DNA of 64,000 bases. Source: Chlorokybus atmophyticus. Its lineage: Eukaryota > Plantae > Mesostigma and Chlorokybus algae. The stretch lies in the NCBI GenBank assembly GCA_009103225.1, contig RHPI01002533.1, positions 461,368-525,367 on the forward strand. The letters are read 5' to 3'. The position numbers were made by a program, and so were the translations under genes. Positions 9,304 to 12,300 of this stretch are shown here, piece by piece (the stretch's first letter is position 1; each line of letters opens with the position of its first letter). The notes beneath the pieces are model-generated. The model worked only from the letters and a program-made list of their open reading frames with translations. It was not told the DNA's origin and did not search any database.

Positions 9304-12300
9304 GGCCGTCATCTGCAATCAACCATATGACAGCATCCTCAAGCACCGGCAGCCACAGCAGCGCTCGCTCAGCATTGCTGCCAGCATTCGCGCGGCGGAA
9401 TACCACACAGCCACCTGCGCCCCACTTGTCTGTTGCTGAAGTGTCCACAGAAGTAGTAGAAGACGCAGAAGTAGAACAGGAAGAAGCAGCGCAAGCAGGA
9501 GATAGCGAAGAAGGTGACGATGAGGTTGAAAGTGAAGACGAAGATGAAGATGAGGAGTTGGTGTTTCCTTGTGAGTTCTGCACACAGCTTCAGAATGCAA
9601 GCGAACTAGATAGCCACCAGCGTGCATGCCGGGTGGACAGGGTTGTTAGCGTATACACAGCTGAGGTTCAACTACCGTGCGAGTTCTGCAATGAGCCTTG
9701 CGCTGCAAGCCTATTGGAGAAACACCAATCTCACTGTCAGCAGCTACAGCATGATGCCACAGCACCAAGTACAGTTGTTCAAGTTGATACGGACGGCAAC
9801 CATGACGTTGGAGGTAACAACTCTTTACTTGTTGCAAATTGCATGAAATGATACACATATGTGGTTGACTGTTTAGCATAGCACCAAACCCCTGCTTTGG
9901 TTGCATTGCCACAGCGCCTTGTGATGGCCATGCCGTGCTGCCTTGCGAGTTTTGCGGCGAGTCGGTACTGGCGCTAGAGATTGTGAAACATCAGAGGATG
10001 TGCCAGGAACAACTGGCAGTTCAGGACGAAGCATTGGCGAACGCACTGCATGAAGACTCTGAAGGCACATCTGAGGACTCAGTCGGCAGCGACATTGAAT
10101 CTGAAGGTCACCGCATGCCTCACAGCACCTATGCATGTCACGTGTGATAATGATTGAACAGCCACAATGCAGTGCCCTGTGTGACTTATGCAACATGTGT
10201 TGGCTGCACGTGCTCTATAAATCAACCAGTGGTGACATGTCTGTTGGCTTAGTGTGTACAGTCTGTCTCTTTACTCATGCAGCATCCTGGGAATCGCGAC
10301 GCGCTTGACAACAGCGTGAGTCGCGATACAGTTGTGCAGCTCATCGGCATTATCTCCAGCTGGTGGAAGGTTTTGTGTTGTGTCACCACTCGTCATGTCA
10401 CTGACACACGCAACCTTAAGTTGACCTGCATTGGTCCTGCTATGTTGGCCTGGCTTGACACGTGCACAAGGCTATAAACAGGCATTGAGACGTGTCTATG
10501 CTGTCATTATGTTCTATTCCTATGCCATAAGAGCACTTGCATCTAACAGTGTTTCACACAGATGCACGTTGCGAAGGTGGTGACCAGGCCGGCTGCTCAT
10601 CAGAGGCTTGGCTTGTGCCTTGCAGTTTTTGCGGTCAACAAATTGAGTTCACCGAGCTGATTGTCACACACGCACCAGCGTGTGAGAAGCAGCAGCTGGA
10701 GTTTGCGCAAAAGTTAGAGAAGGAAGCGAGCGACAAGGAGGAAACCAGCACCGACGAGCATCATCGGCCTCCCAAGATACGGCGTCGACATGCCGCTCTA
10801 GGAGGGATGAAACTTCCCCTGAAGCAGCCGCTTAGAGCCCATAACATCGATTCAAATATAGCATCAACATCTGCTTGTGTCACGCACGTGCGACAGGTAC
10901 TGTCATTGGCAGTGTATGCAGCATGTGATGCGCAGCTTGCTGGCTAGCATCTTGAAGACAAGATGCAATGCGCATACTGCTGTTCATGCTTTGTTGGCGA
11001 TATATTTTGTCTGTGTTTACAGACTTGTTGCTGGGTCAATCACTGCTGAGGGTGCTTATCTATGCTGATGTGCCTTGTTGAAGGTTTGATATGCCTGTAC
11101 CTAGCAGAGATCAGGTGTCCCACTTGTAAGGGAGACATCGCTGGTAAGGGTGCTACCCGCTGCCAGTGAAATACGGCTGCCTTTCTTCCAGGTGTGCTGC
11201 CGGATGCTGTGTTGTGGAGTTGTCTGCTAGCTTTGTCGCTGAGTACTGTTTGTATAGGTGTTTGAGAACGTGCAAAGTGCCAAGAAGGAAGTGTGGGAGA
11301 CCATGACAAGGTTCCTGGGTCAAGAACCGGAGTTCATTGATTCGCAGGAAGACACTGCTTGCATGCGAAAACGCGGCTGGATTCACAACCTGCCAAGAGA
11401 AGGGCGGCCACCGCTGCCAAACGCAAGTGAGGCTGATGAACCGCGTGCATGCGTGTTTGCGCATGCGTGCATTTCATGTGCTTGTGAGTTACGTGTCCTG
11501 CTTGATGTAACTCCTGCGCGTTAGCGTAGGAGATGTGACAATATTTGCAGTGCTGCCAAAGTTGGCGACCAACTGGCCGCAATGGGACAAGCGTATGAAG
11601 TTGAACTGCTTCCTGAGCGATATCGGGGTAAGTGTTATTGGCATCTGAAGCCGGCGAGTGATCAAATAATACCTGCCACTTGATTCAATACGCAATTCTA
11701 TGGCATGCATTCAAATGGGAGGTTGCGTACTTGTATCATACGTTGTCTCTGACATGCTGCTCCGCAGTGTGGCGCTGAAGCCCAAAGGATTGTTGATGAA
11801 TACGAGAGCAATGGCTTCAACTACATCTCCAATGAAAGCATTGCAACCATGCACAAGAAGAATTTGGTGTGGTCCCAGAAGCTCCCACACACGCTGAGGT
11901 ATTTTGCTGCGAGGCAATTGTCTAGCTTCTGCATGCTAGCTCAATGCATCATTGGTGGCTTGCTCTGGCTCTGGCTTGTGCAGAACCATGAAATTCACAG
12001 AGATTGAAAGAGTCCTGGGATTTCCTGTTAATTATACCATCACGATTGCGATAACCAAGCAACGCGCCAGAGCGCTGGGCTCCACATTTGCGGTTAGTGT
12101 GCATTGTGCGCTTTTTGTGCAAAATGCATGAGGGCCAGCCCCTTGCAGCCTTTGCACTTGCGCTGACTTGTCGCACTTGTTGAACTGACCATGATTGCTA
12201 AGTACTCACAGTCATCTGCAGCTTTATTATTGTCTCACGCATCTGTGTGGCATGCAGGTTCCCACACTGGTGAGATTGCTCGCACCTGCAGCACACAAGT

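What the first reader, a model, noticed from the sequence alone, without database searches (positions are those of the whole stretch)
9304..11300. DRM methyltransferase whose N-terminus appears to use four CCHC zinc fingers instead of UBA domains
Seen: PCEFC-x11-HQRAC, PCEFC-x11-HQSHC, PCEFC-x11-HQRMC and PCSFC-x12-HAPAC plus an acidic tract, on the same strand directly upstream of the DRM catalytic exons. I saw no stop-terminated final exon between them, and LGGMKLPLKQP occupies the position of the MIGFGVP linker of plant DRMs. Knowledge: land-plant DRMs have N-terminal UBA domains, and C-x2-C-x11-H-x3-C spacing is shared by UBZ4 and TRAF/XAF1-type fingers. Inference: an undescribed targeting module for de novo methylation, possibly a convergent ubiquitin reader. 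The fingers have HQ rather than the UBZ4 H-x-D, so ubiquitin binding is uncertain.
Basis: partly seen in the sequence, partly recalled or inferred. Interest (0 to 1): 0.8.

Follow-up and report, generated by a model that had tools for sequence, protein, structure and literature searches.

The report
Algal DRM methyltransferase with zinc fingers
The early-diverging alga Chlorokybus expresses one spliced gene that joins four TRAFD1/XAF1-type zinc fingers to an intact plant-type DRM de novo DNA methyltransferase domain, in the position where land plants have UBA domains, so DRM is older than a 2024 survey states and its N-terminal module has been exchanged during evolution.

Summary
Four C-x2-C-x11/12-H-x3-C fingers and two acidic tracts lie at 9450-10683 on the + strand.

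RNA contigs join them by GT..AG introns to the DRM exons. There are ten coding exons (9304-12959) and one 694-aa ORF. A stop in the 5'UTR exon closes the N-terminus, so no UBA exon can lie upstream. The model equals the public Chlorokybus atmophyticus protein Chrsp1S03088.

Residues 340-694 are a true, motif-complete DRM domain. They align collinearly with solved NtDRM (E 6e-58) and AtDRM2. On a tree they fall inside the DRM clade but outside the land-plant DRMs.

The nearest sequence relatives of the fingers are the repeated LPCEFC..HQ..C fingers of animal TRAFD1, and more distantly the XAF1 XIAP(RING)-binding domain. They are not RAD18-type UBZ4 fingers. The predicted beta-beta-alpha fold fits TRAF-type and UBZ4 fingers equally, and the UBZ4 aspartate is absent.

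One metagenomic DRM (P0112) has a single finger matching finger 4. The scan already noted a three-finger paralogue about 12 kb before this window (s1-179399).

Ligand and activity are untested. This is a new variant of a known kind.

The parts
8392..8516 (+). 5'UTR exon (true 5' end not determined); in-frame TGA at 8483-8485 closes the ORF upstream of the start codon
   Evidence: X1 contig 1 joins 8516 to 9304 by a GT..AG intron; frame check
9304..9813 (+). Coding exon 1: ATG at 9327, acidic tract 9450-9557, finger 1 at 9567-9629, finger 2 at 9675-9737; ends in phase 1
9915..10106 (+). Coding exon 2 (phase 1 to 1): finger 3 at 9941-10003 and the start of the second acidic tract
   Evidence: weak Pfam zf-C2HC_2 match, E 9e-5 and below the curated cutoff
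10562..10896 (+). Coding exon 3: finger 4 (x12 spacing) at 10618-10683, charged helix 10684-10764, basic PPKIRRRH (NLS-like, inferred) at 10768-10791, LGGMKLPLKQP at 10798-10830
   Evidence: the E2-E3 junction is also seen in run X3; finger 4 is the one matched by the single finger of P0112
11108..11191 (+). Coding exon 4: RSGVPLVRE (11108-11134), equivalent to the plant MxGFGxP linker, and the start of the PFF..ENV block
   Evidence: junction 10896/11108 in X1 contig 3; alignment A3
11258..11426 (+). Coding exon 5: motif VI ENV (ends 11272) and RKRGWIHNLP (11366-11395)
11530..11627 (+). Coding exon 6: WPQWDKRMKLNC (11574-11609), a DRM-specific block
11768..11898 (+). Coding exon 7 of the DRM domain
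   Evidence: junctions seen in X1 and X2
11984..12092 (+). Coding exon 8: motif IX region (R..LGSTF.V)
12258..12392 (+). Coding exon 9: motif I, LSLFDGIGAA (12339-12368)
12478..12959 (+). Coding exon 10: motif IV, VIGGSPCNDLS (12661-12693); stop TGA at 12820-12822; 3'UTR to at least 12959

Best explanation
This is one expressed nuclear gene of Chlorokybus atmophyticus. It has ten coding exons plus a 5'UTR exon and encodes a 694-aa protein identical to the public model Chrsp1S03088. The C-terminal half (aa 340-694) is a circularly permuted DRM-type cytosine-5 DNA methyltransferase domain with all catalytic motifs present, so it is probably an active de novo methyltransferase (activity inferred). 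Land-plant DRMs carry UBA domains at the N-terminus. Here the N-terminal half (aa 1-340) instead has an acidic disordered tract, four C2HC zinc fingers of the TRAFD1/XAF1 class separated by acidic linkers, a charged helix and a basic NLS-like patch. My reading, which is inference, is that the finger array is a zinc-dependent protein-docking module that brings the enzyme to a chromatin-bound partner. Known relatives of these fingers act in the ubiquitin system: the related XAF1 domain binds the RING of XIAP, and the fold equals that of TRAF-type and UBZ fingers. The partner is therefore most plausibly a ubiquitin-system component, such as a RING E3, ubiquitin or a ubiquitin-like mark. I do not expect binding in the RAD18/WRNIP1 UBZ4 mode. 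Finger 4 plus the helix lies next to the catalytic domain and is shared with a distant environmental DRM, so it looks like the older core. Fingers 1-3 look like later internal duplications.
For: Shown. Ten GT..AG junctions appear in RNA contigs of three runs from two studies; one 1545-nt contig runs from finger exon 3 through DRM exons 4-10. The frame is open for 694 aa with an upstream in-frame stop. The model is identical to EukProt/JGI protein P0001. The DRM part matches NtDRM 4onj at E 5.9e-58 over residues 3-344 and AtDRM2 7l4c at E 5e-52, while DNMT3A matches only residues 221-338, against the N-terminal part of its own domain; this is the permutation. Land-plant DRM2 proteins cover 90-97% at 36-40% identity. 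Motifs I, IV, VI and IX and the HNLP and WD.R.LNC blocks are conserved. The AF2 model's best structural matches are DRM2-DNA complexes, E 7e-22. On the tree the DRM clade has 100/100 support; P0001 and P0112 lie outside a land-plant clade supported at 96/98. Fingers: the best database matches of aa 76-275 are TRAFD1-family proteins and ZNF474 (E 3.6e-7 to 1e-3). BLASTP aligns them to TRAFD1's repeated LPCEFC-x11-HQ-x2-C fingers. hhalign gives 98.8% probability. The finger profile hits FLN29/TRAFD1 2d9k (4e-4) and the XAF1 XIAP(RING)-binding domain 2lxw (1.8e-3). AF2 gives a beta-beta-alpha model with pLDDT 93. There is no UBA. A second finger-plus-DRM protein, P0112, exists.
Against: No binding or activity data exist. 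No Chlorokybus finger reaches a Pfam curated cutoff; the best is zf-C2HC_2 at 22.5 bits against a cutoff of 27. The animal finger set used for hhalign was picked by a regex that shares the invariant residues, so that score is partly circular. Structural matches of a 35-residue finger are all non-significant (E above 0.3). Contigs cannot prove that single molecules span exon 1 to exon 10: contigs 1 and 3 of run X1 overlap by only 30 nt, although run X3 bridges that junction with 47 and 183 nt. The P0001 branch is long (2.65), so its exact place on the tree is unsure.
Confidence: 0.75

Rival explanations
1. The fingers are true UBZ4-type ubiquitin-binding zinc fingers (RAD18/WRNIP1-like). Ubiquitin reading would then be the ancestral DRM targeting principle, later taken over by UBA domains.
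For: The spacing C-x2-C-x11-H-x3-C is the same, with a hydrophobic residue three before the His. The finger model superposes on RAD18 UBZ-ubiquitin (5vf0, TMq 0.82, rmsd 1.0) and on WRNIP1 UBZ-ubiquitin (3vht, probability 0.95). A mollusc protein whose only two fingers found by my regex are PCEFC-type carries the automatic name 'UBZ4-type domain-containing protein' (P0302). The profile weakly hits pol eta UBZ (E 0.03).
Against: The residue two after the His is Asp in RAD18 and WRNIP1 and is needed for ubiquitin binding (my own knowledge). Here it is R, S, R or P. No RAD18, WRNIP1 or SLX4 sequence appears in any sequence search. TRAF4 and FLN29 fingers fit the model as well. The fold is generic.
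Confidence: 0.2
2. The fingers bind nucleic acid, for example nascent or small RNA, like the CHHC fingers of GTSF1 and U11-48K, and so couple the methyltransferase to an RNA-guided pathway.
For: Foldseek lists U11-48K (2vy4) and GTSF1 (6x46, TMq 0.74) among the top six structural matches.
Against: The ligand pattern here is CCHC, not CHHC. There is no sequence similarity to those families in any search. The N-terminal half is strongly acidic (66 D+E against 24 K+R), which does not suit nucleic-acid binding.
Confidence: 0.08
3. The protein is a catalytically dead, regulatory DRM3-like paralogue, and the working DRM is the neighbouring three-finger gene.
For: Two paralogues are reported in the genome (s1-179399; not checked here). 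P0001 has a very long branch and some substitutions in motif IX (LGSTF against LGNSF).
Against: Motif I (FDGIG), motif IV (GGSPCN), motif VI (ENV) and the R.R and HNLP blocks are all intact. The gene is expressed.
Confidence: 0.07
4. There are two adjacent genes, and the join is a read-through or an assembly artefact of RNA contigs.
For: The tool warns that a contig across two genes does not show a single transcript. Contigs 1 and 3 of run X1 overlap by only 30 nt.
Against: The 10896/11108 join is a clean GT..AG splice that keeps the frame. No in-frame start codon is available for a separate DRM ORF in exon 4 (stops precede it). The independent public gene model is identical. P0112 has a finger and a DRM domain in one intronless ORF.
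Confidence: 0.03

Closest known systems
Land-plant DRM2 / NtDRM (PDB 7l4c, 4onj)
   Same: The catalytic domain is the same circularly permuted one (motifs VI-X, then I-V). It is collinear over about 340 residues at 34-40% identity, with all catalytic motifs and the DRM-specific blocks (linker G-x-P, PFF.ENV, HNLP, WP.WD.R.LNC).
   Different: It has no UBA domains. The N-terminus instead carries four C2HC zinc fingers and acidic tracts. It branches outside the land-plant DRM clade. The linker is degenerate: RSGVP in place of MxGFGxP.
Metazoan TRAFD1 (FLN29) and XAF1 zinc fingers (PDB 2d9k, 2lxw; Pfam PF18608, PF21366); ZNF474 / zf-C2HC_2 (PF13913)
   Same: Fingers 1-3 carry the signature h-P-C-E-F-C-x7-L-x3-H-Q-x2-C of the repeated mid and C-terminal TRAFD1 fingers. 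They occur as tandem copies separated by 30-80-residue linkers.
   Different: Those proteins are animal innate-immunity and apoptosis adaptors with no methyltransferase domain. The Chlorokybus fingers do not reach the Pfam cutoffs. Finger 4 has x12 spacing and lacks the E and the Q.
UBZ4 fingers of RAD18 / WRNIP1 (PDB 5vf0, 3vht)
   Same: The CCHC spacing and the beta-beta-alpha fold are the same.
   Different: There is no detectable sequence relationship, and the ubiquitin-contacting Asp after the His is absent (the definition comes from my own knowledge).
Metagenomic DRM P0112 (JGI 3300060284, locus L001 10001-11563)
   Same: It has the layout finger (x12 spacing), charged helix, linker, DRM domain. 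It is 35-42% identical to P0001 and is also outside the land-plant clade.
   Different: It has one finger only, an intronless ORF of 520 aa, and comes from an unknown organism.
Paralogous Chlorokybus DRM with three fingers (scan note s1-179399, about 11.9 kb before the window)
   Same: It is reported to have the same architecture in the same genome.
   Different: It has three fingers and 13 exons according to that note. I could not read its sequence, so the relationship is unchecked here.

Membership tests
DRM (domains rearranged methyltransferase) | Circular permutation: motifs VI-X precede motifs I-V | tested here: met
   ENV is at aa 369-371, FDGIG at 566-570 and SPCN at 646-649. DNMT3A matches only query residues 221-338, against the N-terminal residues 7-112 of its own domain.
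DRM (domains rearranged methyltransferase) | Full-length collinear similarity to solved DRM catalytic domains, and the same fold | tested here: met
   4onj at E 5.9e-58 (residues 3-344 against 17-352) and 7l4c at E 5e-52. Foldseek gives 7l4c at E 6.8e-22 with TMt 0.78.
DRM (domains rearranged methyltransferase) | Catalytic residues intact (motif I FxGxG, motif IV PC, motif VI ENV) | tested here: met
   Alignment A3.
DRM (domains rearranged methyltransferase) | Groups with DRMs rather than DNMT3 on a tree | tested here: met
   100/100 support against re-permuted DNMT3; outside the land-plant clade (96/98); long branch.
DRM (domains rearranged methyltransferase) | N-terminal UBA domains | tested here: not met
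   No UBA family at E up to 0.1 in P0001, whereas plant DRMs in the same scan show UBA hits. The N-terminus is complete.
DRM (domains rearranged methyltransferase) | De novo CHH methylation activity and dependence on RdDM | not testable with these tools
   Needs enzyme assays, methylome data and genetics.
TRAFD1/XAF1-class C2HC zinc finger | Signature h-P-C-E-F-C-x11-H-Q/E-x2-C | tested here: met
   Fingers 1-3 match fully. Finger 4 is P-C-S-F-C-x12-H-A-x2-C.
TRAFD1/XAF1-class C2HC zinc finger | Significant sequence similarity to family members | tested here: met
   E 3.6e-7 to 1e-3 against 5.8 billion proteins; nearly all hits carry PF21366, PF23580, PF18608 or PF13913. hhalign gives 98.8% (partly circular).
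TRAFD1/XAF1-class C2HC zinc finger | Reaches a curated Pfam threshold (PF18608, PF21366 or PF13913) | tested here: not met
   Only zf-C2HC_2 matches, at 15-22.5 bits against a cutoff of 27. Finger 2 scanned alone gives nothing.
UBZ4 ubiquitin-binding zinc finger | C-x2-C-x11-H-x3-C spacing and beta-beta-alpha fold | tested here: met
   (RAD18 5vf0 TMq 0.82; E-values not significant).
UBZ4 ubiquitin-binding zinc finger | Conserved Asp two residues after the zinc-binding His (H-x-D-x-C), which contacts ubiquitin (my own knowledge of RAD18 D221 and WRNIP1 D37) | tested here: not met
   The residue is R, S, R and P in fingers 1-4.
UBZ4 ubiquitin-binding zinc finger | Binds ubiquitin | not testable with these tools
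   Needs pull-down, ITC or NMR.

The most novel reading that the evidence does not exclude
The finger array reads the ubiquitin system: ubiquitin, a ubiquitin-like mark on chromatin, or a RING E3 such as a histone ubiquitin ligase. Land-plant UBA domains would then be a non-homologous replacement for the same job. Ubiquitin-coupled recruitment would be the ancestral targeting principle of DRM, and it would predate Pol V-based RdDM.
Probability: 0.25. Interest if true: 0.8.

Novelty: new variant of a known kind. Interest (0 to 1): 0.6.

Why it matters
A 2025 review calls the role of the UBA domains in DRM2 'critical but yet unidentified' (PMC7617993). A natural DRM with a different but possibly analogous N-terminal module gives a comparative handle on that question. 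Testing what the fingers bind, and whether they can replace UBA in Arabidopsis drm1 drm2, would show what the N-terminus is for.

The gene also places an intact, expressed DRM in Chlorokybus. A 2024 paper says that Chlorokybus has no DRM orthologue and puts the origin of DRM at Klebsormidiophyceae/Charophyceae together with NRPE1 (PMC10991848). This pushes the origin of the permuted enzyme to the base of the streptophytes.

Finally, the TRAFD1-type PCEFC finger, so far seen in animal immune adaptors, turns out to be an old eukaryotic module.

Tried and rejected
1. Pfam scans, exon by exon and finger by finger, gave only a sub-threshold zf-C2HC_2 match and no UBA, UBZ or TRAF model.

2. PDB sequence searches with the four-finger profile and with aa 70-280 gave only chance-level C2H2 hits. 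Only the wider 93-finger profile reached FLN29 and XAF1.

3. The word-index search with the whole protein was swamped by acidic low-complexity words and gave 2 hits. The two region searches were informative.

4. The first metagenome scan found nothing. The second gave 78 DRM loci. The 28 with a readable ENV-to-HNLP ORF all looked land-plant-like, and none of the 78 had a credible finger upstream. Many are short contigs, so this is weak evidence of absence.

5. Streptophyte-algal DRMs (Klebsormidium, Chara, Mesostigma) were not retrieved by any search. I therefore cannot say when UBA replaced the fingers.

6. The Atlas look-alike search for finger 4 plus the helix gave no usable hit.

7. In the full-length AF2 model the N-terminal half has low confidence, because the alignment holds no finger homologues. 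It says nothing about finger-domain docking.

8. Locus L002/L003 (P0009) is a divergent partial DRM-like transcript without readable 5' sequence and was not informative.

9. I could not read the paralogue noted by the scan, because it lies outside the window.

10. The idea of a separate DRM start codon in exon 4 was rejected: stop codons lie just upstream of the acceptor in that frame.
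Full report
**Observation.** A 36-residue acidic tract precedes finger 1, and a second acidic stretch lies between fingers 3 and 4. A six-frame scan for C-x2-C-x10-13-H-x3-C finds eight matches in the whole 64-kb window. The four in this gene are the only ones clustered and the only ones with the P-C-x-F-C signature. Shuffled windows give 0.2 matches on average. Aligned to one another, the fingers share P, C, F, C, H and C invariantly, and fingers 1-3 also share E-F-C and H-Q.

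**Gene model and expression.** One search for sequencing runs found four runs that hold part of the stretch. I laid them on 8200-13200.

- Runs X1, X2 and X3, from two studies, contain contigs that skip ten segments, all GT..AG, so they are spliced RNA although the run type is only guessed.
- X1 contig 1 joins 8392-8516, 9304-9813, 9915-10106 and 30 nt of the next exon.
- X3 bridges 10106/10562 with 47 and 183 nt.
- X1 contig 3 (1545 nt) runs from 10562-10896 (finger 4) through 11108-11191, 11258-11426, 11530-11627, 11768-11898, 11984-12092, 12258-12392 and 12478-12959.
- X2 confirms the last four junctions.
- A low-depth X1 contig (10257-10589) retains intron 2, which explains why the assembly graph breaks at the start of exon 3.

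I joined the exons only inside scripts that read window.fa, in order to check the frame. The ORF runs from the ATG at 9327 to the TGA at 12820-12822, 694 aa, with an in-frame TGA at 8483-8485 in the 5'UTR exon. The exon-10 search returned a public protein, P0001, which a script showed to be identical to the model. All later full-length work used that id. P0001 is EukProt EP00898 Chlorokybus atmophyticus P000166, which is JGI Chlat1 Chrsp1S03088.

There is splicing, not polyadenylation, between 10900 and 11250. The 8300-9300 region holds a 5'UTR exon and an intron, not a UBA exon.

**The C-terminal half is a DRM domain.**

- Residues 340-694 match the solved NtDRM catalytic domain at E 5.9e-58 (residues 3-344 against 17-352) and AtDRM2 at E 5e-52.
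- DNMT3A and DNMT3B match only residues 221-338, and they do so against the N-terminal part of their own catalytic domain. This is the signature of the circular permutation.
- Land-plant DRM2 proteins cover 90-97% of the region at 36-40% identity, whereas DNMT3 proteins cover about a third.
- In an alignment with nine DRMs, the blocks PFF.ENV, R.RG.IHNLP, WP.WD.R.LNC, NLVW, EIE..GF, LG..F.V, LSLF.GIG and GGSPCN are all present.
- An AF2 model (DRM part pLDDT about 80-94) has DRM2-DNA complexes and NtDRM as its best structural matches (E about 1e-21).
- On a maximum-likelihood tree with DNMT3 domains re-permuted as outgroup, all DRMs form one clade (100/100). P0001 and the metagenomic P0112 fall outside a land-plant clade (96/98) whose internal order follows the plant phylogeny. 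The P0001 branch is long, so its exact position is unsure.

The same alignment shows that the plant MxGFGxP linker corresponds to RSGVPLVRE at the start of exon 4 (11108-11134).

**The N-terminal half.** Pfam finds no UBA in P0001, while plant DRMs in the same scan do show UBA-like hits. The fingers reach no curated Pfam threshold; the best match is zf-C2HC_2 for finger 3, at 22.5 bits against a cutoff of 27.

A word-index search scored on residues 76-275 returned, apart from the protein itself, 57 proteins at E up to 0.1. Nearly all are animal TRAFD1-family proteins (PF21366, PF23580, PF18608) or ZNF474 (PF13913), with a best E of 3.6e-7. No other methyltransferase appeared.

BLASTP shows that the similarity is not to the N-terminal TRAF-type part of TRAFD1. 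It is to TRAFD1's repeated mid and C-terminal fingers, which read [LI]-P-C-E-F-C-x11-H-[QE]-x2-C. A regex census finds two to five such fingers in almost every hit.

Profile-profile comparison of the four algal fingers with 88 animal fingers gives 98.8% probability. This is partly circular, because the regex fixed the invariant residues.

The combined finger profile hits these solved structures:

- FLN29/TRAFD1 (2d9k), E 4e-4
- the XIAP(RING)-binding domain of XAF1 (2lxw), E 1.8e-3
- a TRAF4 finger, E 0.016
- pol eta UBZ, E 0.03

Of the 93 fingers in that profile, 54 match PF18608 XAF1_C, but finger 2 of P0001, the only algal row tabulated on its own, matches nothing.

AF2 folds finger 2 as a beta-hairpin plus helix with pLDDT 93. 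The nearest solved folds are a TRAF4 finger, WRNIP1 and RAD18 UBZ4 in complex with ubiquitin, CHHC fingers, and the FLN29 and XAF1 fingers. None is statistically significant, because the domain is tiny. The language-model Atlas search pointed to the same TRAFD1/XAF1/UBZ/CEP104 group.

The fingers are therefore best filed with the TRAFD1/XAF1 class. The UBZ4 label is not supported by sequence. From my own knowledge, UBZ4 fingers of RAD18 and WRNIP1 need an Asp two residues after the His to bind ubiquitin. That residue is R, S, R and P here.

**How widespread is the architecture?**

- Among the 150 best representatives for exon 10, seventeen besides P0001 have the DRM motif order. Only P0112 carries a finger.
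- The ten that could be named are land plants.
- P0112 is a 520-aa intronless ORF on a 50.7-kb eukaryote-like metagenome contig. It has one N-terminal finger with x12 spacing, a charged helix and a DRM domain.
- Its finger aligns with finger 4 of the Chlorokybus protein.
- A metagenome scan gave 78 further DRM loci. Those with a readable ORF are land-plant-like, and none has a credible finger upstream.
- The scan's notebook records a paralogue with three fingers about 11.9 kb before this window (s1-179399). I could not read it.

[quoted passage not shown] A 2022 preprint mentions a non-canonical LxCxE motif in the Mesostigma DRM2 orthologue, without domain detail. [quoted passage not shown] I found no paper describing zinc fingers on a DRM. 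The library is incomplete, so this is not proof of absence.

**Mechanism.**

- Shown: this is one expressed gene with an intact DRM domain, a finger array of the TRAFD1/XAF1 class and no UBA.
- Inferred: the enzyme is an active de novo methyltransferase, and its acidic, zinc-finger-studded N-terminus docks it on a protein partner at chromatin.
- The solved relative binds a RING domain, and the fold is that of TRAF-type and UBZ fingers. A ubiquitin-system partner is therefore the most plausible ligand, but binding in the UBZ4 mode is unlikely.
- Finger 4 plus the helix is shared with P0112 and looks like the older core. Fingers 1-3 are 39% identical to each other. Two of them lie in one exon and one lies in a symmetric phase 1-1 exon. 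They look like later duplications.

**Verdict.** This is a new variant of a known kind, of moderate to high interest for the evolution of plant DNA methylation.

Noticed in passing
window 13152-14767, minus strand: A convergent neighbour gene encodes a biotin-protein-ligase N-terminal domain (PF09825, E 1.5e-54) fused to a BioY biotin-transporter domain (PF02632, E 6e-8) in one 475-aa ORF, with a probable first exon at 14582-14767. An RNA contig covers its 3' end from 13042, which is only about 80 nt from the DRM 3' end at 12959.
   Followed up: partly
window 10257-10589: A low-depth RNA contig (3.1 against about 60) retains the 3' part of intron 2. It is either unspliced pre-mRNA or a minor isoform that would truncate the protein after finger 3.
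   Followed up: no
L001 10001-11563 (JGI metagenome 3300060284, contig Ga0590114_0003660): An intronless 520-aa DRM with a single N-terminal C2HC finger sits on a eukaryote-like contig (the neighbours include Sin3a_C and MIT fragments). The organism is unknown. It is the only other finger-plus-DRM protein I found.
   Followed up: partly
L002 330-1977 and L003 (Logan SRR22824304 / SRR22824306): A divergent DRM-like transcript (P0009) has ENV in one ORF and motifs I-IV in an overlapping ORF in another frame, plus a roughly 110-aa acidic C-terminal tail. The organism is unknown.
   Followed up: no
window 52000-54750: A low-GC stretch (38% against about 52% elsewhere) holds two perfect (GA)n microsatellites (53224-53276 and 53838-53894) and a 123-bp tandem duplication (54502-54744).
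   Followed up: no
P0273-P0328 (animal TRAFD1 proteins): The repeated [LI]PCEFC-x11-H[QE]-x2-C fingers in the middle and C-terminal half of TRAFD1 are extremely conserved from molluscs to birds, yet the Pfam models cover them poorly. Vertebrate copies of the last finger read HQDQC, so they do carry the UBZ4-like Asp.
   Followed up: partly
about 11.9 kb before the window start (scan note s1-179399): A second DRM gene with three fingers is reported close by on the same piece of DNA, so the two look like a local duplication. I did not see its sequence.
   Followed up: no
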